The position numbers were made by a program, and so were the translations under genes. Below, piece by piece: positions 4,407 to 23,459 of a DNA stretch of 64,000 nucleotides. The first letter of the stretch is position 1. Each line of letters starts with the position of its first letter. The stretch covers positions 1 to 64,000 of IMG/VR virus record IMGVR_UViG_3300024239_000015. One strand, written 5' to 3'. The notes beneath the pieces were generated by a model. The model was not told the origin of the DNA. It saw only the letters and a program-made list of their open reading frames with translations, and made no database searches.

Positions 4407-7000
4407 TTCTGTTTCCTCGCTTCTTGACGTTTACGCGTCGTAAAACGACGACCACTACATTCCATCACGTGATTCACAAACAAGTAACTCCGACCGTTCC
4501 CACGTTTGACTACGTGTTTGTCCCACACGGCTTGGATGTCCATCGGGTTGTCAGCCGTCAGTAGTTTATACGCAATCGCTTTTTGTGCTGCAGGAGAGTT
4601 TTGCATCTCCAAGAAGTCCGCTGTGGCTTGAGGTCCAATCTTTGCAACCAGCAAACGGATTTCTGCTTCACCCAGTATCCGTGTCGGGTTTTCACGCCAC
4701 GGTTTACTGTTACGATCGTTCTGCGTGAGTTTCGCTAAGATCCCATAGTGCTGACGTTTGAAGCTGCTGCCCGCTGCAGCGTCATCGCCAATCTTCTCTA
4801 ACAACATCACGTACATACTACCAATCAACACAGGGTCTTTCGTCGTGTACTCTTTCCCAGCGTAATCCTTATACGTCACAGGACCGATAGGAATAGGAAA
4901 CGACTCTCTGAGCTGTTGGATTTGTGGAGCACCAATGTTAGGACTGTGGGGTGGGAGCAACAACCTCACCACAGGCTGGCTGACCGCAAACTCCGGATGG
5001 CGATGTTGGTGAATCTGCTCATTTAACTCTTTGAGCTTTTCAGCTGGACTGAGTTTGAAGCTTAAGTACTCCTCATATTGCAACGGAGAAGCAACCGAGT
5101 AATACGCCATCAAATACCGCCACGCATCGTCCACACGTCCTCGATCCATAAACTTGATCAAGTTCTGTCGCACCCACCAACTGGTTGCGTTGACGTAATG
5201 TTCGTAAATAATACCCGGATTCATTCGTTTGGTGACCGAGTCGCCACAGAAAACCAGATGTGCTCTACGTCCCCATTGGTCTATAGGCATATCTTCCCAT
5301 TTTCTGATATCTACCAATACCCCTTTCTTTTTGTCCAGTTATGTCGCTACCATAACCCGGTGTGCTAAGACACCCGCCCTTACTTTCATAAGGGAACAGA
5401 CTATATCAATCCCACAGCGGTACGGTTTATGTACCCTGGTTGGGCCTCTCGTTTGGGGCGGCCAATCGCTTGCCGCTCTACAGGGTGGTCCAGTCCCTTA
5501 GTCGTTGAACACATCCCATACCTGTAAATAGGGTTAGGGACTTCGATGCGGATTGCCCCGACGTTACTACAGTAACGCTCTATGTCTCTTTTACCATACC
5601 TGAGTAGTTAGTTCAGCCACCGTGGAGTGATGTAAACATCACTCGATCACTGTTTCCAGCACGGCTTGGTGTACATAGTTTCTAGGGTGTTCCCGTCAGT
5701 TAGATGAGTGGCATCTAAGAATTACTTCCTAGACGAACAAAGCCTTACCGCTCATTGAGCCATAAGTTCCGTTACCAAGTAAGCCTACAGCTTTTGAACC
5801 TACATTCGGTGTGTACTTGTAGGTGTATTTGATCTTTACCCACCAATCATCCAGAGGTGCAGCACGATACGTTCTCGTTACGATCGCTTTGGCATTCTTT
5901 GGATTATTCGGTAGGGCTTCTAGTGCAAGGAAACGTTCCAGTTCAGGTGTGGTTTGCACCCGTTCCGGTTGGTACTTTCCATTTCCTATACGCCGTACGT
6001 AATCTCGATACGTTTGGATGACCTCACTGTAAAACTCATCCTGCGCAGTTTGATACCGCTGTGGTTGAGTTTCCATCCCCACTGGCGTCGGTGGGGTTTG
6101 GTTTGTAAAGTCATGGAGTACTTCGATGTCAGTGACGATCGCACCACCTTTAGCGTACACGCGTTTATCGAACTTGTAGTCGATTTCCCGTAACGCTTTA
6201 AGCGACATTTGACATGGTCCTAAGAGTTCATCGTAAGGTCGCATGACAAACAGTAACCCATCGTCTCTTATTTTCTCCCCTACGTCTGGATACGGTTTGT
6301 AATTCTCATCGTCCCCATAAAGGTTTAACAAGAAGAACTTTTTACCATAACTACAGACAGCCTCTCCAAACGCCGTAGCGCGATTGGCTTTACACCACGT
6401 ATCGGAGGCAACGATACCGTCCTCGATGATCTCTGGGATCGTCATGAACGCAATATCGGTTTCTACCCCGTACATATACTCCCCATCGTCAGTGACGTTG
6501 GGAGAGTCTGCAAACACGTATCCTTTAGGGATAATGTCCCCTGGTTTAAATTTGTTAAAGCTGTTCTGTAACTGATCCGCTCTGTATTTAAACCCGAAGG
6601 TTTGGTGCGCACAGTGGTGTGTACGTAAAAGCACCATCCCTAAGGAATGGATTCCATTTTGTAGTTTCTCCATCTCCTCGTAGATCAGGATCGTCGTGGG
6701 GTTACTGCGAAATGGAAAGCCTCCTAGTTTCTTTGGAAACTTATGGATTACTTTTAACAACCGTCCGGTGGTAGGCATCGTTTGTTTAAAAGTAGTTTGT
6801 GCGTATTCAAACTCGTGTCCTGCGATCAAGTTAGGTCGCGTAGGACAATCCACCACTAAACTTTGTGCCTGATGACCTCCCCGCATGGATAAACGCGGGG
6901 AAGACGCACAGGCGATATAGTTTACTAAATCGGTGGTGTTCCCGAGCAATTGGGGATGCAGCTCGTTTTTAGACCTGTGTACCAAGGGTCTCAAAATCAT
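4400..7000 (-). CDS. Non-virion RNA polymerase beta-like subunit, C-terminal part (phiKZ gp71-73-like), two exons: about 7000-5771 and 5326-4400
   Basis: Exon 1 ends GSKAVGLLG(N); exon 2 starts KGVLVDIRKWEDMPID, rebuilding the beta motif GDK.AGRHGNKGV..I...EDMP; KRMNPG, GSMYVMLLEK and GEAEIR follow. Confidence 0.9.
5327..5773 (-). mobile_element. Group I intron without ORF in nvRNAP beta-C
   Basis: R element GTTCAACGAC (5501-5510), S element GATATAGTC (5399-5407), P3 GCCACTC/GAGAGGC, P2 with GTAA loop, P9 CCCTTAT-GAAA-GTAAGGG; 5' boundary uncertain (5770 or 5773). Confidence 0.88.
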
Positions 7001-15931: not shown

Positions 15932-16540
15932 TTACCCCAATGCCCCATTGAGCTCATCGGTGGTGTCAATCCCTTCTGCAAATCCAGCTACCATAACATC
16001 GATACTGTACCGAATGTCTAGTTTCTGTTGCGTACTTAAAGGAATCTCGTCGTCGTCCCCTACGACACAAACCCGTACTAAAGGTCCTTCGTCGTCAAAG
16101 TTGACTTGTCCACTGTAAACACGACAGTAGTCATCGTGGTCCCAACGAGACACACCCGGCTGTAGGTCGACATACCGCTCTCCAAACCCATGACAGCGTT
16201 GGTCGTGGTACACGTCCCGGATCTCAGGAGCCACCATCAACCACCGTACCATTTCTTGTGGAGCGTTCTGTACCTCTTCATACGTTGACAACCGATGGAT
16301 ACTGTTGACTTGTGTGAAGCTTTCCGTCCGAGCACGTAACGCGTCTGCAATCACTAACGCGTGTGAGTCAACCAAAGTTGACGCGTGTGCAATCGCTTGG
16401 TCGTACTGAGCCCGTCCAAGCTCAGTTAACCCACTGACGTAATCGTGTCGTTGTGTCTCTACGTACTGGAGTACGTTTTGATGTGGACGTCCGTAAGCCG
16501 CAGCATGTTGCAGCGCACGGCCTCCTTCTACCACTCGCAT
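15932..16540 (-). CDS. Conserved nucleus-block protein directly downstream of beta'-N
   Basis: ATG abuts the TAA of the reconstructed beta'-N exon 3 (GGAGG RBS inside that exon). Confidence 0.7.
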   Translation of the reverse strand: MRVVEGGRALQHAAAYGRPHQNVLQYVETQRHDYVSGLTELGRAQYDQAIAHASTLVDSHALVIADALRARTESFTQVNSIHRLSTYEEVQNAPQEMVRWLMVAPEIRDVYHDQRCHGFGERYVDLQPGVSRWDHDDYCRVYSGQVNFDDEGPLVRVCVVGDDDEIPLSTQQKLDIRYSIDVMVAGFAEGIDTTDELNGALG

Positions 16541-16804
16541 TTATACCTCCAGGTTTTTAAATTGCGCCAGTTGGTGGTCTGGGTCATACCGTTCTATAGG
16601 CAACTCAAACCGTTTTGCTGACGCTTCATCTCGATACAGCCAGTTAGCTATCGTAGCAATAGTTGCACTGTGTAGTGCAATTACACGACTGACTTTACGA
16701 GGCGTACCGTGGTCTAATACCCCTTTGTGAGGCGCTAGTTTCCTAAGCGCTTCAAATTGCTCCCTGTCTAATGCGACAAGGGCATTTAATGCATCACCGT
16801 CAAA
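16541..16804 (-). CDS. beta'-N exon 3 (87 aa, not in the ORF track)
   Basis: TTT GAC GGT GAT GCA = FDGDA... open to TAA at 16541; preceded by the intron terminal G at 16805. Confidence 0.9.
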   Translation of the reverse strand, partial: FDGDALNALVALDREQFEALRKLAPHKGVLDHGTPRKVSRVIALHSATIATIANWLYRDEASAKRFELPIERYDPDHQLAQFKNLEV

Positions 16805-19800
16805 CCATGTATGTTCGGAGAGTTCGCAAGGCTCTCCCGCGTCTCACGCTTCACAGCGTGGGTACGCAGCTGTAGGCTTTCCCTACAGTGCAGACTATAC
16901 CATCTACTCTCCTTTATAGAAGAGCAGCACCACATTTCGAAGTACCTTGAGTTTTCACTCTAGCTTGTACCCCTACTCCCCGCTACGGGACAGTCGTTGA
17001 ACACACTCCGTAATCTGTGTAAACAAACCCTTAGGAGCTTCGCTGCTGATTGACCATTTTACCTTTCGGTTTCTTTTTCATCCCCTTAGCGCCGTTTCCG
17101 GTTTCTTTTCAGCATAGGGCATCTCTACGATTGTTTCTGGGTTTCCCCACCTGACGTTCAGAAGACTCGCGCCGTCCTAGTGATCTCCGTGTACCGCACT
17201 TGCTGCCAAGTACTGTAGTTTACTGTTTCCAGCACGGTGTTGGTTGCAGAGCTTTAGGCTTTTCCAGCGTTTAGTGGTGTACGCATCCACCCTCGCGGAT
17301 AGATGGGACTTTAACATACTAACTAACGTTAACGTATTCGATTTGATATATTGACCATCTACCCCCGTTGATGGACATTCCCCTTTGTACCGTATTTCTT
17401 CGAGCTCCCACTTCCGCACAAAAGTCCAGAGTCGACGCGTAGTGCTTAACTTCGCCGGTCAACTTATTGGTTACTTTTATCGGAAAGGCCGGACGTCGCG
17501 AGTTAGGTGACATTTTCTTAGGCTTTCTCTTAACGACAGTTCCCACAGAACCTTCCTTCTCGTCAAGATGTTTTGCTAGGAATAAACCCCTGACTCTAGT
17601 CCCCCTATTTATCGACTGCCATATCGAACTCGTAGACACATTGAAGTATCTGGCAGCTTCCCCGTAGCTCTCGAAGATATAAACTTCTTTTCCATCCTTA
17701 GAAGTCAATACAACTTCGCGCGGGGCACCATTTGGTTTCTCGCCGACATTACTGGAATCGATTTGTTTCCAACTCGAGTCCGCGTAACGCACGTTGTATT
17801 TTTTCAAGAACGGAGTTTGCTGTGTGGAGTTCAGATAAACGTGTAACCTACTCTGGGACGCTTTCAGCCACGCGGCTGCTTTGTTTAAACCCAAGAACGA
17901 ATTAACTTCCTGCGTGGTTAAGTCTAAGACCTCTACAGGACGATTATCTTTCTTCAGCCCTAACTCGTAAGCGTGCCATAAGTTTCTTTTCCTATCGACC
18001 CATTCTAGGTTACTGGCTCTGTTGTTAAATTTATCGCCATCGATGTGATTCGTGACGTAGTGGTCGTGTTCTTTGTGATGGAACGTTTCGGCGACAAGAC
18101 GATGGTGTGTCATCGTGCCTTTACCGCGTATGTTCATCACGTTATACCCGAAATGTGAGTTGAAGTACGCTAAGGGACAATAATCTAACAAAACATCAAT
18201 TACTATCCCTTCTTCGGAAATCACAATCCGAGGAATCTGGGGGTGGTGGTAATACTTAGGGTATCTTTTCGATTCTATCAAACCTTCGCGCATCTTTCAT
18301 TTCCTTCTCATGCTAGTCGCATAAGATAGATGCATGTTAAGTTAATTAATGTTATTTCATCGCAGTTCATGCCGGTTATACAGTGAGTGGATACACTGAC
18401 TGAGTTTATAGCCGGGTCTTTCTTTATCCTGCTGATAAAGAATTGCTGCATGGATAGTTCATGCAGTGTGGGCTTTGCTTTCACGTAGGGCGCGACACCT
18501 ACGCAGTTCTTAAAAGAACGTCCCCAGAATTACCTGGGATAAAAGACTATATCTTCATCCGTTATAAGTAGGGATAACGGAGCTCCTCGTTTCGCATAGT
18601 TTTAAACTACTTAGCGCTAGGCTAACCACCTGACCTTTCGATCGCTTGCGGGCTACTCTACTCCCTTCTCTTTCTTATTGCAAGAAAGCGGTTTCGATAG
18701 TCGTTGAACACATTCCGTAATGTATACTGCTGATACACCCTTAGGAACTTCGCTGCTGATAGACCCAGACTCTTTGTTTTCAAACCGTCACGTAGACCGT
18801 TTCCAGTTGCGTTGTGGTAAAGAGTTTTAGATAGATCGTCCCAGCAGTTAGAGGAGTTTGGCGTTACTGTTACCAGTAAAGGAAACCTAAGTCAATTTCG
18901 ATGGAAAATACACGGGATACCACGGATCTCTCGATGTTCGTGGGGTTGTGTACCGATGGGGTTATAAACACCAACGACGTAAGGGGAGTCGCTGATTAAC
19001 TCATCAAAGAGTGCATCCAGCTCTGGGTTGTAAGTGTGAGCGTTTTCAGACAGGAATTTCTCAATCTGATTCGGACCCCACCCACGTTTCAAAAGCTTAT
19101 TGGTGAGCTGTGCTTGCAATACAGCAATCGCAGTCGTCCACGGAATCTCCAGCTCTGAGTATAAGTGCCATCCTGTCAAGGAGTTCACGACGTTACGGAA
19201 GCTGTAGTTTGCACGTGTACCGAAGATGTGTTTACGGAACCATCCCTTCTTCCCACCTAGAATGTTCTTGTACAGGTTGTTGTAGTACGCACTGAGTTGT
19301 ACCACACACACCGTTGCACGACTCTCTGCTTTCTTTAACCGTACGTTCTGGTACGCTTCCCCTAAGTCGAGAATGGTGTAGGCTGCATCAATCGCGTCTA
19401 CCATTCCGAAGTCGGCGTAGGTACCCACCGCTGTTTTCTCTGTAATAAACGCAATCTTGTTTGGGATTGGTAGATATGGAGTAAACACCAAGTCACGGTT
19501 CTCACGCACCAGCTCCATGACGTTGTCTTTGCGATCGGGTGAGCCTGAGTACAATCGGTTATCCACGAGGATACTTAAGTACAGGTCAAAGTGATCAAAG
19601 AAGTTATTCAACCCCCGTTGAAACCCATACGCTTCCAGTTGTTCTCCAAACGCACTATGACCACTCGGGATACGGTAGTAGGGGTCACATAACCACCGCA
19701 TGATACTGATCCCGTTCTTCTTAAACAGTTGGTCTAAGATGTACCAGATTGTTGGGTTAATCAACGCTTTCACGCCCCGTGGTGCGCGTATCCATAACGT

Positions 19801-20097
19801 AGACTCGATTGGACGCTCGAGAATACTCATGGGAACGGTACCACACAGCTCACAGCGCAGTTTAATGCTTGCTGCATACTGCCCTGTGGTATGCCCACAC
19901 CCACACGACGGGAGGACGCTGACTTGGTCTCCATCGTACTCTGTCCGTATTAAATTGGACAGAAATTGTTTTGCTTGCACGGTACGTGCGTCGATGTCAT
20001 TGATACACACCGGTGGCACGGACTGTGCGCCGTACATTTCCACGTAATCGACGAGTTCTAGATAGACGCCATCGTCGTTTTCGTTTGTTTCTACCAC
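16541..20097 (-). CDS. Non-virion RNA polymerase beta'-like subunit, N-terminal part (phiKZ gp55-like), three exons: 20097-18895, 18472-18359, 16804-16541; 526 aa when spliced
   Basis: Zn finger C.CG..C..C; KKGWFRKHIFGTR; spliced junctions read IFHRN|PTLH and GMNCD|FDGDALN, restoring the NADFDGD-type active-site motif. Confidence 0.92.
16805..18358 (-). mobile_element. Group I intron 2 of beta'-N, carrying an HNH endonuclease in the P1 loop
   Basis: 5' site GAT| (U) pairs with IGS GTCCCA; P4 GCTG/CAGC; P3 CACCAC/GTGGTG; R GTTCAACGAC (16993-17002); S GTATAGTC (16893-16900); ends in G. Confidence 0.9.
17319..18293 (-). CDS. Intron-encoded HNH homing endonuclease with NUMOD1-type DNA-binding repeats (I-HmuI-like)
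   Basis: HRLVAETF..VTNHIDGDKFNNRASNLEWV; C-terminal repeats such as FESYGEAARYFNVSTSSI; AAGGA RBS. Confidence 0.92.
   Translation of the reverse strand: MREGLIESKRYPKYYHHPQIPRIVISEEGIVIDVLLDYCPLAYFNSHFGYNVMNIRGKGTMTHHRLVAETFHHKEHDHYVTNHIDGDKFNNRASNLEWVDRKRNLWHAYELGLKKDNRPVEVLDLTTQEVNSFLGLNKAAAWLKASQSRLHVYLNSTQQTPFLKKYNVRYADSSWKQIDSSNVGEKPNGAPREVVLTSKDGKEVYIFESYGEAARYFNVSTSSIWQSINRGTRVRGLFLAKHLDEKEGSVGTVVKRKPKKMSPNSRRPAFPIKVTNKLTGEVKHYASTLDFCAEVGARRNTVQRGMSINGGRWSIYQIEYVNVS
18359..18472 (-). CDS. beta'-N exon 2 (114 nt, 38 aa, not in the ORF track)
   Basis: Translates PTLHELSMQQFFISRIKKDPAINSVSVSTHCITGMNCD, matching the beta' segment (R.)PTLH...N.D. Confidence 0.9.
18473..18894 (-). mobile_element. 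Group I intron 1 of beta'-N (422 nt, no ORF)
   Basis: 5' site GAAAT| pairs with GTTTC including the U-G wobble; R GTTCAACGAC (18700-18709); S AAGATATAGTC (18545-18555); ends AAAG before CCC ACA CTG. Confidence 0.9.
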
Positions 20098-20206: not shown

Positions 20207-22003
20207 TTACCAGCGAGACTGGAAGCTTTGACCGTTGTTAAACGTCGGTGCGTTGTAGCCAGTGCTGAATGCATTTGCAGACAGACCGCCAGACAACACG
20301 TCTACGTTTGCACGAGGTACGACGCGAGTTTCGTTTTGTGTGTACTCTGGAGTCAGAGCCGCACCTACTTCACCCAACGCAGTCACCAGGGCTAACAGAA
20401 CGCGATCGTTTAACATCACTTCAGTAGCGTAGTCAGTGATCACCACGTCACCTAAGTATTTCTTCTGCAGCTGACACAGTACAGTCAGACGTTCTTCGGT
20501 AGAGGCACGACGTGGATCGTAACACTCATCGAAACGGTAGACTTGGGTTAAGTCTTTGTCACCTTCCATAGCAGAGATTGCCATGTGGTCGAAGTCACGG
20601 ATGTCGGACTTCACAGAGTGGCCATTGGTGTAGTAACCTAACGGAACCCGTGTAGGGACGACTTTACCGATAGGACCAGAACCTAAGCGCTGGAACACTT
20701 CAGAGAACTTACCAGAGGTCAGGTTATCACACGCTTGTGTGAAACGCTTCACTGCCGTGTCAGAACCCGCACAGGCGTCACGTAACAGACTCAGTAACCA
20801 GGTGTCTTCACCTGTTTCTGGGATGTGTACTACGACCGCTACTTCTGGGTGAACGAATTCAGCGAAGAAGCGGTTTACGTCGAACGTAGGTTCGTTAGCA
20901 CCCACACGAGTACCTGCTGGCAGTAAACCTTCAGCGGCCATTTCAGCAGACAGCACGTCTAAGCTACGCTCAGCGCCATGGCGGTGGAACGTGTTGATGT
21001 ACTGACGGCTACGGATTGGTTCAGCAGCTAACGCTAATGCCAACACCATGTGCTCAGGCGTGGTCACACCGGCGTTCAGTGACAGATCGGTGACAACCAT
21101 ACGCGCTTGGAAGTGCTGAGTAGTAGCACGAGCTGGCTGGTATGGCGTTTCGATCATGCGTGGGCCTACGTAGACTAAGTCTAAGAAGGCAGACAGCTGA
21201 GCCATGTTACGAGATTGACCCGCTAACAAACCACCATTGGTGTTGGTGTTCACCAACGCAACAGAAGCAGTGATGTCACGACGTACGGGTAAACCACCTG
21301 CTGTTTTAGCAGGAGCTGACGCTAACTCTACACGGCTACGTAATTGGAAGCCTGCTTGGTTTGCACCTTTCATAGAAACGATGTACTGACCTGCTTCCTG
21401 TAACGCTGCTTTTAAGTTGTACTGTAAAGCAGACATTGCACGGACTAACACGTCGCGTACGGCTTTGGCATCGCCTGGAGCAGTTTCACGGGGTACTACA
21501 CTGAAGCCTACGAATGACGCCGTTGGCGGTAAACCTGCTAACGCTTTAGACACCAGTGGTTGGAACTGAGGATCACGTGTTAAGTCACCTACGGTTTGTG
21601 GGTACAGTAACTCACGTTGACCTAAGTTGATGCTGTCGTTGCGTTTGGCTAACATCGGCAGTTCTTCTGCAGTACCTGCTAATAACATCAGGTACACCGC
21701 AACTTGCTTTTTGTACTCACCCACGATCGCTACAGCTGACACTGGGATCAGAGTCGTTTGTTGATCCAGTTCCAGCATGGTGAACTTGAAGTTGTCACGG
21801 TTGGCAGAGTCTACCATTGGCTTCAGAGTTTCTAAGTAGCCAGACAGCACTTGACTGTGTGGGCTTAACGGCATCACACCGCTGGTTTGTGCTGCAAACA
21901 TAGCAGCTAAGTTTTGAGCGACTGGTTGTTCACCAGTGAACGTTTGTTGTTGTTCTGCTTGTGCCTGAGTCGACTTCTGGCTGGCAGTGTTCAGTTCTTT
22001 CAT
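20207..22003 (-). CDS. chmA: Chimallin, major nuclear shell protein (phiKZ gp54-like)
   Basis: 598 aa directly upstream of beta'-N; Q-rich flexible N-terminus; RVPLGYY..DIRDFDHMAI-type motifs; strong high-expression codon bias. Confidence 0.82.
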   Translation of the reverse strand: MKELNTASQKSTQAQAEQQQTFTGEQPVAQNLAAMFAAQTSGVMPLSPHSQVLSGYLETLKPMVDSANRDNFKFTMLELDQQTTLIPVSAVAIVGEYKKQVAVYLMLLAGTAEELPMLAKRNDSINLGQRELLYPQTVGDLTRDPQFQPLVSKALAGLPPTASFVGFSVVPRETAPGDAKAVRDVLVRAMSALQYNLKAALQEAGQYIVSMKGANQAGFQLRSRVELASAPAKTAGGLPVRRDITASVALVNTNTNGGLLAGQSRNMAQLSAFLDLVYVGPRMIETPYQPARATTQHFQARMVVTDLSLNAGVTTPEHMVLALALAAEPIRSRQYINTFHRHGAERSLDVLSAEMAAEGLLPAGTRVGANEPTFDVNRFFAEFVHPEVAVVVHIPETGEDTWLLSLLRDACAGSDTAVKRFTQACDNLTSGKFSEVFQRLGSGPIGKVVPTRVPLGYYTNGHSVKSDIRDFDHMAISAMEGDKDLTQVYRFDECYDPRRASTEERLTVLCQLQKKYLGDVVITDYATEVMLNDRVLLALVTALGEVGAALTPEYTQNETRVVPRANVDVLSGGLSANAFSTGYNAPTFNNGQSFQSRW

Positions 22004-22221: not shown

Positions 22222-23397
22222 ATGGTATGTGCGAAAACGTCTTCAAGACTCATGTTTACCAAGGAGCAGATTGTGCTGACTTTATTTTTGTCTCCGAGTG
22301 TAAAGGCTTACGGAGGCGTCCGTCTCGGACAGTATCCGTATATAGAAAGACGATTCAGTGAAAACTTTCGAACGGTAAGGGACCATTACCGGACGAGAAA
22401 CCTAGCGGTGAAGAACACACACTTCCTCGTGACTGCATTAGACTCTTTACCGATTGCAGATACAGGTTCACCACATCGCTTTGCAGACGTAGCTGCATCC
22501 TTAGCTCCCAACTTACTGAATCGGTTTGGAGTAGGAAGTGACCGTTACGTAGGAAAGTTTCAAGCCACCCAACGGTTCTTTGGAAGTAACGTCTACGAGT
22601 ACCTGTACTTAACACAAAGTTACTACGACGAGTTTACACTCAAACCGAGCGAGTGGATGTACTTACGTCCTATCCAAGTGCTGAGCCATCCTCGTACAGA
22701 TTTTGATTACTCTATCCTCGCAGGACAGATTACCACCGAAGAATCAGGGCACGCGTTTATTACCATTGACTTTGGTTTACTGGCATTCCAGTACCACTGT
22801 TGGCGTAAAGAACACTTGAGGAAAAACGGTGGAGTCTTTTTGGGGTCAGTACGACAGTTTCTAGTGCAATACCCATTAGCGAACTTAATCCCAAGTTACA
22901 ACAACATCGCATGGTACAACACGGTGTTTCGTAGTGCCATAGGGTACACGCCTGCGTTATCAGTCAATCGTCCGCCTCTCGCGATTCCTGACTCGTACAC
23001 CTACGTGAGGGAAACTGCAGCACAGTTTCACGCAAACTTAACGCGTACAGGACGAGCTTTGCAAGCAGAAGCGTTACTCCAGTGGATACCGAGTGTGGAC
23101 ATGTATGCAAGTAATGCAGCTGAGGACACCTACTGTTACCCTACAAGAGTGCACTCCACTCCCGCAGAAGTCGCGCGATGGTTTTGTCAACTCGATTGGT
23201 GTGAAACGGTTTTTGGAATTCTGTTTCAAAACGAAGCGATCAAGAACAACCGTGCGTTAGTGAACGAGTACTTAAAAGACTACCGTCGGTTAGTGAATAC
23301 AAAACTGTTACAGGACGTTGCGATGCCGTTAGATGCACGCGACTACTTAAACAGAAAGTTAGACACGATACTCGCGTACATAACGGAGGGAGCGTAG
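22222..23397 (+). CDS. Conserved jumbo-phage protein (phiKZ gp52-like position)
   Basis: 391-aa ORF divergent from chmA, as in phiKZ-like genomes. Confidence 0.6.
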   Translation: MVCAKTSSRLMFTKEQIVLTLFLSPSVKAYGGVRLGQYPYIERRFSENFRTVRDHYRTRNLAVKNTHFLVTALDSLPIADTGSPHRFADVAASLAPNLLNRFGVGSDRYVGKFQATQRFFGSNVYEYLYLTQSYYDEFTLKPSEWMYLRPIQVLSHPRTDFDYSILAGQITTEESGHAFITIDFGLLAFQYHCWRKEHLRKNGGVFLGSVRQFLVQYPLANLIPSYNNIAWYNTVFRSAIGYTPALSVNRPPLAIPDSYTYVRETAAQFHANLTRTGRALQAEALLQWIPSVDMYASNAAEDTYCYPTRVHSTPAEVARWFCQLDWCETVFGILFQNEAIKNNRALVNEYLKDYRRLVNTKLLQDVAMPLDARDYLNRKLDTILAYITEGA

Positions 23398-23459
23398 TGC
23401 TCCCTCCTTATGCTTGTCATTTTATGGACTGTTTAGAATTTAACCAAAAGGGTGTGTGT

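What the first reader, a model, noticed from the sequence alone, without database searches (positions are those of the whole stretch)
16541..18897. RNAP active site split across three exons by two adjacent group I introns, with a hidden 114-nt exon
Seen in sequence: exon 1 ends IFHRN. Intron 1 (422 nt) is followed by the 38-aa exon PTLHEL...GMNCD. Intron 2 (1554 nt) is followed by exon 3, FDGDALN.... All four junctions obey the U| and G| rules and stay in frame, giving 526 aa. The ORF track misses exons 2 and 3. Two self-splicing events are needed to build the Mg-binding motif. Inference: splicing order or exon skipping could regulate the switch to nvRNAP-dependent transcription.
Basis: seen in the sequence. 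Interest (0 to 1): 0.75.

Follow-up and report, generated by a model that had tools for sequence, protein, structure and literature searches.

The report
Two self-splicing introns split phage polymerase gene
A giant "nucleus-forming" phage carries two group I introns, one with a homing-endonuclease gene, inside the catalytic part of one of its RNA polymerase genes. The reading is correct, but phiKZ and its relatives have the same kind of intron in the same gene, so this is a new example of a known thing.

Summary
On the minus strand, exon 1 (20097-18895), exon 2 (18472-18359, 114 nt) and exon 3 (16804-16541) join in frame to give 526 aa. This product aligns without a gap at either junction to intronless homologues (FHRN|PTLHEL, MNCD|FDGDALN).

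Both intervening sequences match the group I intron model, though below Rfam's cut-off: 47.2 bits (E 3.7e-10) and 29.3 bits (E 8.5e-5). Both have a U·G pair at the 5' splice site and a terminal G. Intron 2 carries an intact I-HmuI-like HNH endonuclease gene in the loop of an extended P1 stem.

The gene is the phiKZ gp55 homologue (nvRNAP beta'-N), next to chimallin.

The arrangement is not unique:
- phiKZ has an endonuclease-bearing intron 6 nt upstream of the intron 2 site, and its published GP55 numbering fits only the spliced form.
- Phage Bobae has two introns around a 108-nt exon, the first at exactly the intron 1 site.
- An IMG/VR phage has an ORF-less intron at exactly the intron 2 site.
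- This genome holds at least six group I introns, including one at the same motif position in its virion polymerase beta' gene.

The patchy distribution fits selfish mobile introns. Nothing supports regulated splicing. No RNA data exist.

The parts
18895..20097 (-). Exon 1 of the nvRNAP beta'-N gene (phiKZ gp55 homologue), 401 aa, ending ...IPCIFHRN
   Evidence: ORF list. phrog_2987 'RNA polymerase beta subunit', E 1.9e-109. tblastn finds 297 jumbo-phage records including PHIKZ055. Lies directly downstream of chimallin, as in phiKZ.
18473..18894 (-). Intron 1: 422-nt group I intron with no ORF. U18895 pairs with G18886 in P1 (GAAAUU / GGUUUC). P2, P3, P8 and the P9 helices appear in the fold. 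Ends in G18473.
   Evidence: RF00028 47.2 bits, E 3.7e-10, full-length model match. MFE fold. Same insertion site, after CGA AAU, as intron 1 of Pseudomonas phage Bobae (88.9 bits).
18359..18472 (-). Exon 2: 114 nt, 38 aa, PTLHELSMQQFFISRIKKDPAINSVSVSTHCITGMNCD. This is the conserved segment that ends in the first Asp of the Mg-binding motif.
   Evidence: Gap-free alignment to Eowyn (PTLDRLS...MNAD) and FLC9. The counterpart in Bobae is a 108-nt exon.
16805..18358 (-). Intron 2: 1554-nt group I intron. It inserts between the codons NCD and FDGD and ends in G16805.
   Evidence: Sequence. RF00028 core match at 17221-16870, 29.3 bits, E 8.5e-5. 77.5% identity over 200 nt to the helicase-gene intron of the same genome (47.2 bits). 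An IMG/VR phage (L016) has a 74.7-bit ORF-less intron at the identical site NAD|FDGD.
17319..18293 (-). Homing-endonuclease gene inside intron 2: 324 aa, HNH_3 plus NUMOD1, I-HmuI-like. Its last codons and the stop (TAG 17321-17319) lie in the 3' strand of the P1 extension.
   Evidence: Pfam PF13392 and PF07453. phrog_59 HNH endonuclease, E 3e-27. PDB 1u3e I-HmuI, E 1.7e-5, with the H...NH..N..N motif conserved. 25% identity to phiKZ gp56, E 4e-22. The best full-length relatives sit in the same gene's intron in SPN3US-like phages and phiKp_32.
18341..18354 (-). 5' strand of the long P1 extension of intron 2 (UAACAU-UAAUUAAC)
   Evidence: Two-strand MFE fold pairs it with 17327-17312.
17307..17327 (-). 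3' strand of the P1 extension (GUUAGUUA-GU-AUGUUA, 17327-17312). Internal guide GUC (17309-17307) pairs with exon GAU, giving the U18359·G17309 wobble. GUUAAA (17315-17310) can pair with the first six bases of exon 3 (UUUGAC) as P10.
   Evidence: Fold and direct reading of the sequence. The same ..AGUCCC.. guide region follows GAU| in the vRNAP beta' intron of this genome and in the L016 intron.
16541..16804 (-). Exon 3: 87 aa plus stop, FDGDALNALVALD... It carries the second and third catalytic Asp. Its stop overlaps the ATG of the next gene (TAAATG).
   Evidence: Alignment to Eowyn and FLC9. tblastn of Eowyn residues 443-510 onto 16804-16601.

Best explanation
[quoted passage not shown] Each intron folds in the pre-mRNA into a ribozyme. 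A free guanosine attacks after the U of a U·G pair in P1, and the released exon end then attacks after the intron's terminal G. Both introns must be removed to give the 526-aa subunit with an intact NCDFDGD Mg-binding loop. If either stays in, translation stops: at UGA right after exon 1, or 16 codons into intron 2. Intron 2 carries an I-HmuI-like HNH endonuclease gene in the loop of an extended P1 stem. By analogy with I-HmuI and PhiPA3 gp210, this enzyme would nick intron-less copies of the same conserved sequence in co-infecting relatives. That would drive homing and perhaps harm competitors. Intron 1 has no endonuclease gene and persists because imprecise loss would destroy an essential gene. 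Shown here: exon structure, junctions, model matches, P1 pairings, the endonuclease domains, and occupancy of the same sites in other phages. Inferred: actual splicing, endonuclease activity and target, and selfish rather than regulatory status.
For: The spliced product aligns gap-free to intronless homologues. RF00028 matches are E 3.7e-10 and 8.5e-5. P1 with a U·G pair is recovered by free-energy folding for both introns, as is the long P1 extension closing the endonuclease loop. The endonuclease domains are intact. Other phages hold introns in the same gene. Bobae has two above-threshold introns around a 108-nt exon, the first at the identical site. phiKZ has an intron with gp56 at N|ADFDGD. 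Yaphecito has one at DFDG|D. EL, Proteus phage 7 and phiKp_32 have one at NA|DFDGD. IMG/VR L016 has one at exactly NAD|FDGD. Splicing is effectively documented for phiKZ: the cryo-EM paper places DFDGD at GP55 417-421 (PMC7618050). That position exists only in the spliced 488-aa product, since the annotated CDS stops before the motif. Literature lists introns in phiKZ gp55 and gp180 (PMC11512511). This genome has at least six group I introns, all in essential replication or transcription genes. One is a 510-nt intron at the same motif position (GAD|NDGD) in the vRNAP beta' gene. So both polymerases of an abundant phage (about 2000x word depth in run X4) would be dead without splicing.
Against: There are no transcript data; no RNA run was listed. 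Both introns score below Rfam's gathering threshold of 50 bits, intron 2 clearly so. P1 of intron 2 has only three exon base pairs (GAU/GUC). No convincing P10 was found for intron 1. The endonuclease target and activity are untested. No intron-less DNA allele of this phage was seen in the four metagenome runs, so mobility is inferred only from the distribution among relatives.
Confidence: 0.85

Rival explanations
1. Regulated splicing: the order or efficiency of the two splicing events, or skipping of exon 2, is used by the phage to time the appearance of active nvRNAP.
For: Two splicing events are needed for a functional product. Exon 2 is a multiple of 3, so an exon-skipped mRNA stays in frame. 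Exon skipping and condition-dependent splicing of phage group I introns have been reported (PMC11878797; PMC10914365). In nucleus-forming phages transcription and translation are physically separated (PMC12908238), which could alter intron folding kinetics. That last link is inference.
Against: Nothing in the sequence points to it. Presence or absence of the introns varies between close relatives and most relatives have none, so nvRNAP timing cannot depend on them in general. The same genome has related introns in helicase, DNA polymerase and other RNAP genes. The guide region of intron 1 shows no complementarity to the start of exon 3, which would favour skipping (reading).
Confidence: 0.07
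2. Weaponised intron: beyond selfish homing, the intron 2 endonuclease gives this phage an advantage by nicking the polymerase active-site codons of intron-less co-infecting phages, as PhiPA3 gp210 does to phiKZ. The introns in both beta' genes protect the phage's own loci.
For: There is precedent in the same phage family (PMC11620839; PMC12908238). The HNH endonuclease is intact. Related introns occupy the same D|xDGD position in both the nvRNAP and vRNAP beta' genes of this phage, and the flanking DNA is shared (GC.GAT|...GACGG.GA.). This is compatible with the best explanation rather than opposed to it.
Against: There is no functional test. The target site is unknown. The vRNAP intron has no endonuclease gene, and its similarity to intron 2 is limited to parts of the ribozyme. 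The low-depth related contigs seen in the same samples were too fragmentary to characterise.
Confidence: 0.3
3. Decayed or split gene: the intervening sequences are not removed, and the gene is a pseudogene or is expressed as separate polypeptides.
For: Jumbo-phage RNAP subunits are naturally split into several genes (PMC7598289). No RNA evidence for splicing exists here.
Against: Exons 2 and 3 have no plausible start codon or ribosome-binding site of their own. All three segments are intact, in frame and conserved. The intervening sequences match a ribozyme model and obey splice-site rules. tblastn with Eowyn RpoBC found no second nvRNAP beta'-N copy in the genome. The homologous phiKZ gene is known to give a protein that contains the motif.
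Confidence: 0.03

Closest known systems
phiKZ gene 55 intron carrying gp56 (HNH endonuclease); 3' exon annotated as PHIKZ056.1
   Same: Same gene (nvRNAP beta'-N, next to chimallin). A group I intron (RF00028 75.6 bits) lies inside the NADFDGD codons. An HNH endonuclease ORF starts shortly after the 5' splice site. The spliced product places DFDGD at 417-421, as in the published structure.
   Different: The phiKZ insertion point is N|ADFDGD, 6 nt upstream of the window's NCD|FDGD. phiKZ has no intron at RN|PT. The endonucleases share only 25% identity, and the ribozymes share only short core segments.
Pseudomonas phage Bobae (PV754031); by match end-point also Churi, ANB1 and KEN49: two-intron form of gene 55
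   Same: Three exons and two group I introns (88.9 and 79 bits) around a micro-exon. Intron 1 is inserted after the identical hexamer CGA AAU (FHRN|PTL). GenBank annotation misses the small exon.
   Different: The micro-exon is 108 nt, not 114, because intron 2 sits at the phiKZ site. Bobae's intron 2 has lost the endonuclease ORF (98% identical to the phiKZ intron flanks). Intron 1 is 305 nt against 422 nt, with little sequence similarity beyond the core.
IMG/VR phage UViG_3300048854_000232 (L016)
   Same: A group I intron (74.7 bits) at exactly NAD|FDGDALN. Its 5' end, GAU|GAACUUCAGUCCC..., has the same GUC guide and a following hairpin homologous to intron 2.
   Different: It has no ORF, is 421 nt with a short P1 loop, and has no intron at RN|PT.
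PhiPA3 gp210 intron in the vRNAP beta gene (Birkholz et al. 2024, PMC11620839)
   Same: A group I intron with an HNH endonuclease, inserted next to conserved catalytic Asp codons of a jumbo-phage multisubunit RNAP gene.
   Different: A different subunit (beta, virion enzyme) and a single intron. Competitive function was shown experimentally there and is untested here.
Multi-intron phage genes: Twort orf142 (three introns, exon skipping); Bastillevirinae phiNIT1 rNDPL (small hidden exon between two introns) and SIOphi TerL (exon skipping) (PMC11878797)
   Same: Several group I introns in one essential phage gene, a small internal exon overlooked by annotation, and the possibility of exon skipping.
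   Different: Different phage families and host genes. Splicing was shown by cDNA there and not here.

Membership tests
Group I self-splicing intron (Rfam RF00028) | 5' splice site follows a U that forms a U·G wobble pair with the internal guide sequence in P1 | tested here: met
   Intron 1: U18895·G18886 within GAAAUU/GGUUUC. Intron 2: U18359·G17309 within GAU/GUC, plus a 14-bp P1 extension. Both are recovered by MFE folding. P1 of intron 2 has only 3 exon pairs.
Group I self-splicing intron (Rfam RF00028) | Intron ends in a guanosine (omega-G) immediately before the 3' exon | tested here: met
   G18473 and G16805.
Group I self-splicing intron (Rfam RF00028) | Conserved catalytic core (P3-P9 with the P7 G-binding site), scored by the covariance model at or above the curated cut-off of 50 bits | tested here: inconclusive
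   Intron 1 scores 47.2 bits, E 3.7e-10. Intron 2 scores 29.3 bits, E 8.5e-5. Both are full-length model matches with the conserved UUCAACGACU and (G)AUAUAGUC P7 strands, but below the gathering score. Relatives at the same sites score 52-89 bits.
Group I self-splicing intron (Rfam RF00028) | Removal restores an uninterrupted, conserved coding sequence | tested here: met
   Gap-free alignment of the 526-aa product to intronless homologues.
Group I self-splicing intron (Rfam RF00028) | Guanosine-dependent self-splicing of the RNA | not testable with these tools
   No RNA run was listed. Needs an in vitro splicing assay or cDNA.
HNH (I-HmuI-type) intron-encoded homing endonuclease | HNH catalytic motif plus NUMOD-type DNA-binding modules | tested here: met
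   PF13392 HNH_3 (E 2.6e-6) and PF07453 NUMOD1 (E 9e-11). The alignment to I-HmuI 1u3e keeps HRLVA...NH.DG...NN...NL.WV.
HNH (I-HmuI-type) intron-encoded homing endonuclease | ORF lies in a peripheral loop of the ribozyme, outside the core | tested here: met
   The ORF (18293-17319) lies in the loop closed by the P1 extension. The core match starts downstream of it.
HNH (I-HmuI-type) intron-encoded homing endonuclease | Site-specific nicking or cleavage of the intron-less allele | not testable with these tools
   Needs a biochemical assay.
Chimallivirus nvRNAP beta'-N subunit (phiKZ gp55 family) | Sequence homology to gp55 and its PHROG | tested here: met
   phrog_2987, E 1.9e-109. tblastn with Eowyn RpoBC matches PHIKZ055.
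Chimallivirus nvRNAP beta'-N subunit (phiKZ gp55 family) | Universal Mg-binding motif NADFDGD | tested here: met
   NCDFDGD is present only after removal of intron 2.
Chimallivirus nvRNAP beta'-N subunit (phiKZ gp55 family) | Position next to the chimallin gene; distinct from the virion beta' paralogue | tested here: met
   Chimallin (PF25677) lies at 20207-22003, directly upstream, the same order as PHIKZ054-055. The paralogue elsewhere in the genome matches RAY 'vRNAP beta' subunit 1'.
Chimallivirus nvRNAP beta'-N subunit (phiKZ gp55 family) | Absent from virions; part of the middle/late transcription enzyme | not testable with these tools
   Needs proteomics.

The most novel reading that the evidence does not exclude
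The codons of the beta' Mg-binding loop are an arms-race hot spot in nucleus-forming phages. At least four staggered intron insertion points occur within its 21 nt (N|ADFDGD, NA|DFDGD, NAD|FDGD, NADFDG|D), plus one 38 codons upstream. In this phage, one endonuclease lineage has placed related introns at the same D|xDGD position in both the non-virion and the virion polymerase genes. The phage would then be immune at both active sites and could disable both polymerases of intron-less co-infecting relatives.
Probability: 0.2. Interest if true: 0.6.

Novelty: new member of a known kind. Interest (0 to 1): 0.35.

Why it matters
For annotation, the catalytic subunit of this phage's polymerase is called as a truncated 401-aa protein unless the 114-nt exon and the 3' exon are joined. 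The same error is present in GenBank records of Bobae, Yaphecito, Proteus phage 7, phiKp_32 and EL. For biology, it adds a well-defined case to growing evidence that the active-site codons of jumbo-phage RNA polymerases are favoured landing sites for homing introns. It also offers an uncultured example in which both polymerases of one phage are hit at the same motif position. It does not open a new mechanism.

Tried and rejected
1. Transcript evidence: no RNA run was listed for exon 1.
2. Four DNA runs from one subsurface-metagenome study hold the intron-containing form. Laying them showed no intron-less allele. It showed only contig breaks at repeated intron-core segments and two low-depth joints, too fragmentary to interpret.
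3. A near-identical DNA search in the phage collection found nothing.
4. IMG/VR locus L003/L014 is 100% identical over 13 kb, so it is the same phage and not independent evidence.
5. An eight-sequence alignment was too divergent for a locus search. A three-sequence one worked.
6. I first looked for the guide sequence of intron 2 just after the 5' splice site and near AAUCGUAG (about 17135). I rejected both because neither gives a U·G pair or the right topology. The guide lies after the endonuclease ORF.
7. I considered an intein, a group II intron, or separately translated split subunits. I rejected these on the ribozyme matches and the lack of start signals.
8. Papers on the AR9 genome, the Ceyssens 2014 phiKZ study and the Twort introns were not held.
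9. The spliced protein was not sent to the structure or large-database tools, because it is not a letter-for-letter translation of the DNA.
Full report
**What is there.** The window is the first 64 kb of a complete 233,377-bp IMG/VR virus record with direct terminal repeats. The gene at 20207-22003 (minus) is a chimallin, the shell protein of the phage nucleus (Pfam PF25677). Directly downstream is a 401-aa ORF (20097-18895) that matches 'RNA polymerase beta subunit' phrog_2987 (E 1.9e-109). tblastn finds 297 jumbo-phage records with a relative, and Eowyn RpoBC also matches PHIKZ055. In phiKZ the order is the same, with PHIKZ054 (chimallin) followed by PHIKZ055. GP55 is the beta'-N subunit of the non-virion polymerase and carries the catalytic DFDGD loop (PMC7618050). 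Calling this gene 'nvRNAP' is therefore justified by homology and gene order.

**The observation.**
- Exon 1 ends CGA AAU at 18895, followed in frame by UGA.
- The next 422 nt end in ...AAAG at 18473.
- Positions 18472-18359 encode PTLHEL...GMNCD and end in GAU.
- The next 1554 nt end in ...AUGG at 16805.
- Positions 16804-16541 encode FDGDALN... up to a stop.

Joined, these give 526 aa without a stop. The product aligns to two intronless homologues, Klebsiella phage Eowyn RpoBC and Burkholderia phage FLC9 gp381, with no gap at either junction: FHRN|PTLHELS against FLRNPTLDRLS, and MNCD|FDGDALN against MNADFDGDALG. Moving either junction by one base would destroy conserved residues, so the junctions are fixed to the nucleotide. 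One correction is needed. The Mg-binding motif itself is split only by intron 2. Intron 1 lies 38 codons upstream, at the start of the conserved segment that leads up to that motif.

**Are they group I introns?**
- Both stretches give full-length matches to Rfam RF00028: 47.2 bits (E 3.7e-10) for intron 1, and 29.3 bits (E 8.5e-5) for the part of intron 2 downstream of its ORF. Both are under the curated 50-bit cut-off.
- Free-energy folding recovers a P1 helix for intron 1 in which the splice-site U18895 pairs with G18886. It also recovers P2, P3, P8 and three P9-type hairpins.
- For intron 2, a two-strand fold of the segments flanking the ORF pairs exon GAU with GUC at 17309-17307, which is again a U·G pair at the splice site.
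- The same fold closes the ORF-containing loop with a 14-bp extension: UAACAU-UAAUUAAC with GUUAGUUA-GU-AUGUUA.
- The six bases 5' of the guide G (GUUAAA) are complementary to the first six bases of exon 3 (UUUGAC), a plausible P10. I found no convincing P10 for intron 1.
- Large insertions between P7 and P3' in the model alignment suggest the extra helices typical of subgroup IA. That is inference.
- The 3' half of intron 2 is 77.5% identical over 200 nt to the intron in this phage's helicase gene, which scores 47.2 bits. Introns 1 and 2 share 80% identity over 70 nt of core.

**The intron 2 ORF.**
- The 324-aa ORF (18293-17319) has HNH_3 and NUMOD1 domains and matches HNH-endonuclease PHROGs.
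- It aligns to the nicking homing endonuclease I-HmuI (PDB 1u3e) with the catalytic motif conserved. It is 25% identical to phiKZ gp56 (E 4e-22).
- Its best full-length relatives (28-30% identity) are ORFs that sit in the same gene's intron in an SPN3US-like phage (Proteus phage 7) and Klebsiella phage phiKp_32. Pseudomonas phage EL has a relative covering about 80% of its length.
- The ORF's last codons and stop lie inside the P1 extension.

**Comparison with other phages.** This is the decisive part. Using the intronless Eowyn protein as a ruler (RN|PT = 404|405, NAD|FDGD = 442|443), I found the following.
- phiKZ has a group I intron (75.6 bits) carrying gp56 at APN|ADFDGD, with the 3' exon annotated as PHIKZ056.1. 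The spliced product is 488 aa with DFDGD at 417-421. That is exactly the numbering in the cryo-EM paper. The annotated 420-aa CDS lacks the motif, so splicing of the phiKZ intron is in effect documented. The literature lists introns in gp55 and gp180 (PMC11512511).
- Pseudomonas phage Bobae has two introns above the Rfam cut-off (88.9 and 79 bits). Churi, ANB1 and KEN49 appear the same, because their matches also end at residue 404. Bobae's layout is exon 1 ending ...CAC CGA AAU, a 305-nt intron, a 108-nt exon (PTLQ...KAPN), a 493-nt intron and exon 3 (ADFDGD...). The spliced protein is 487 aa, and the 70 residues printed across both junctions are identical to phiKZ GP55. Its intron 1 sits after the same hexamer as the window's intron 1. 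Its intron 2 is the phiKZ intron minus the endonuclease ORF, at 98% identity.
- Serratia phage Yaphecito has an ORF-less intron (58.8 bits) at NCDFDG|D. Its relative Haymo, which aligns to Eowyn at about the same identity, has none.
- EL, Proteus phage 7 and phiKp_32 have endonuclease-bearing introns (52-59 bits) at NA|DFDGD.
- Among 11 IMG/VR relatives, ten are intronless. One (L016) has a 421-nt ORF-less intron (74.7 bits) at exactly NAD|FDGDALN. Its 5' end (GAU|GAACUUCAGUCCC...) is homologous to the guide region of the window's intron 2. This supports the P1 assignment and shows that the endonuclease ORF is an insertion into the P1 loop.

**The rest of this genome.**
- RF00028 hits occur at six places. 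In addition to the two above, they are in the nvRNAP beta gene (window 5767-5377), the vRNAP beta' gene, a DnaB-like helicase gene and a DNA polymerase gene.
- The nvRNAP beta intron is near the point where phiKZ-like phages also stop matching.
- In the vRNAP beta' gene a 510-nt intron lies between RLGAD and NDGDM. The spliced product aligns gap-free to Erwinia phage RAY 'vRNAP beta' subunit 1' (LLGGDYDGD).
- The catalytic loops of both polymerases are thus interrupted at the same motif position, after the same GAU and with the same ..AAAGUCCCA.. guide region.
- The phage reaches about 2000x word depth in one run. Both enzymes are essential in this family by established knowledge, which is a strong indirect argument that the introns splice.

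**How it most likely works.** These are selfish mobile group I introns that sit in the most conserved DNA of essential genes. Self-splicing makes them tolerable, and the endonuclease spreads them and may hurt intron-less competitors, as shown for PhiPA3 gp210 (PMC11620839). The introns are sporadically present among relatives, their insertion points are staggered, and this genome has many. Skipping of exon 2 would remain in frame but would remove the 38-aa segment that ends in the first catalytic Asp. It may occur as a by-product, as in Twort and SIOphi, but nothing suggests it is used.

**Novelty.** A group I intron with an HNH endonuclease inside the NADFDGD codons of gp55 is known from phiKZ. 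Two introns around a micro-exon in this gene exist in deposited genomes, although unannotated. A hidden small exon between two phage group I introns, and exon skipping, have been shown elsewhere (PMC11878797). The window adds a new, divergent example in which the proteins are only about 34-42% identical to cultured phages. Among the cultured-phage genomes I inspected, none has an intron at the NAD|FDGD point. I rate it a new member of a known kind. The wider pattern is more interesting: five insertion sites in and near one motif, and both polymerases of one phage hit at the same position.

**Limits.** There are no RNA data. The Rfam scores are under threshold. P1 of intron 2 is short. The endonuclease is untested. 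The site survey covered only a handful of genomes.

Noticed in passing
window 5377-5767 (-): A third group I intron (RF00028 53.8 bits, above the cut-off) splits the nvRNAP beta gene into ORFs 7000-5729 and 5317-4400, both phrog_3295. phiKZ-like phages stop matching exon 1 near the same residue (about 417 of 423), so it may be the site of the phiKZ gp71/gp72/gp73 intron.
   Followed up: partly
G000 85985-86494 (-), = L004 3986-4495: A 510-nt ORF-less group I intron (23.4 bits) lies in the vRNAP beta' gene at GAD|NDGD. This is the same motif position as intron 2 of the finding, with the same GAU|...AAAGUCCCA guide region. The spliced product aligns gap-free to Erwinia phage RAY gp163.
   Followed up: yes
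G000 174242-174571 (+) and 204017-204368 (+) (L005, L006): Further group I introns split a DnaB-like helicase gene (phrog_3213) and a DNA polymerase gene (phrog_3011). The genome has at least six group I introns, all in replication or transcription genes.
   Followed up: partly
L012 3902-3913 (Klebsiella phage phiKp_32, LC768500.1): After an endonuclease-bearing intron at FNA|DFDG, only 12 nt of exon (GAT TTT GAC GGT) are followed by a second intervening sequence of roughly 300 nt. The frame resumes at ...ATG|GAT ACC ATG TAC (DTMYCYVLSDLKGKAKAYG, as in EL). The second element gave no RF00028 match even at E 10, so its nature is open. A 12-nt exon would be remarkable.
   Followed up: partly
window 17217-17310 joined to about 18433 (run X4): A 330-nt contig at about 4% of the main depth, about 88% identical, joins the region just after the endonuclease stop to exon 2, skipping 1122 nt. 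This may be a related strain in the same sample whose intron 2 lacks the endonuclease ORF. A second low-depth contig in X1 joins exon 3 to an intron-1-like core segment.
   Followed up: no
L008, L009, L010, L011, L012 (GenBank records): The deposited annotations of Yaphecito, Bobae, Proteus phage 7, EL and phiKp_32 call the nvRNAP beta'-N gene as a truncated CDS plus small 'hypothetical proteins'. The catalytic DFDGD exon is missed or left unjoined.
   Followed up: partly
window 16538-16543 (-): The stop codon of exon 3 overlaps the start of the next gene (TAAATG). That gene (16540-15932, phrog_3254, unknown function) lies at the same place in Eowyn and FLC9.
   Followed up: no
window 23380-23444 (-): A weak match to the sRNA family STnc290 (32.4 bits against a 60-bit cut-off, E 0.09). 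Most likely chance.
   Followed up: no
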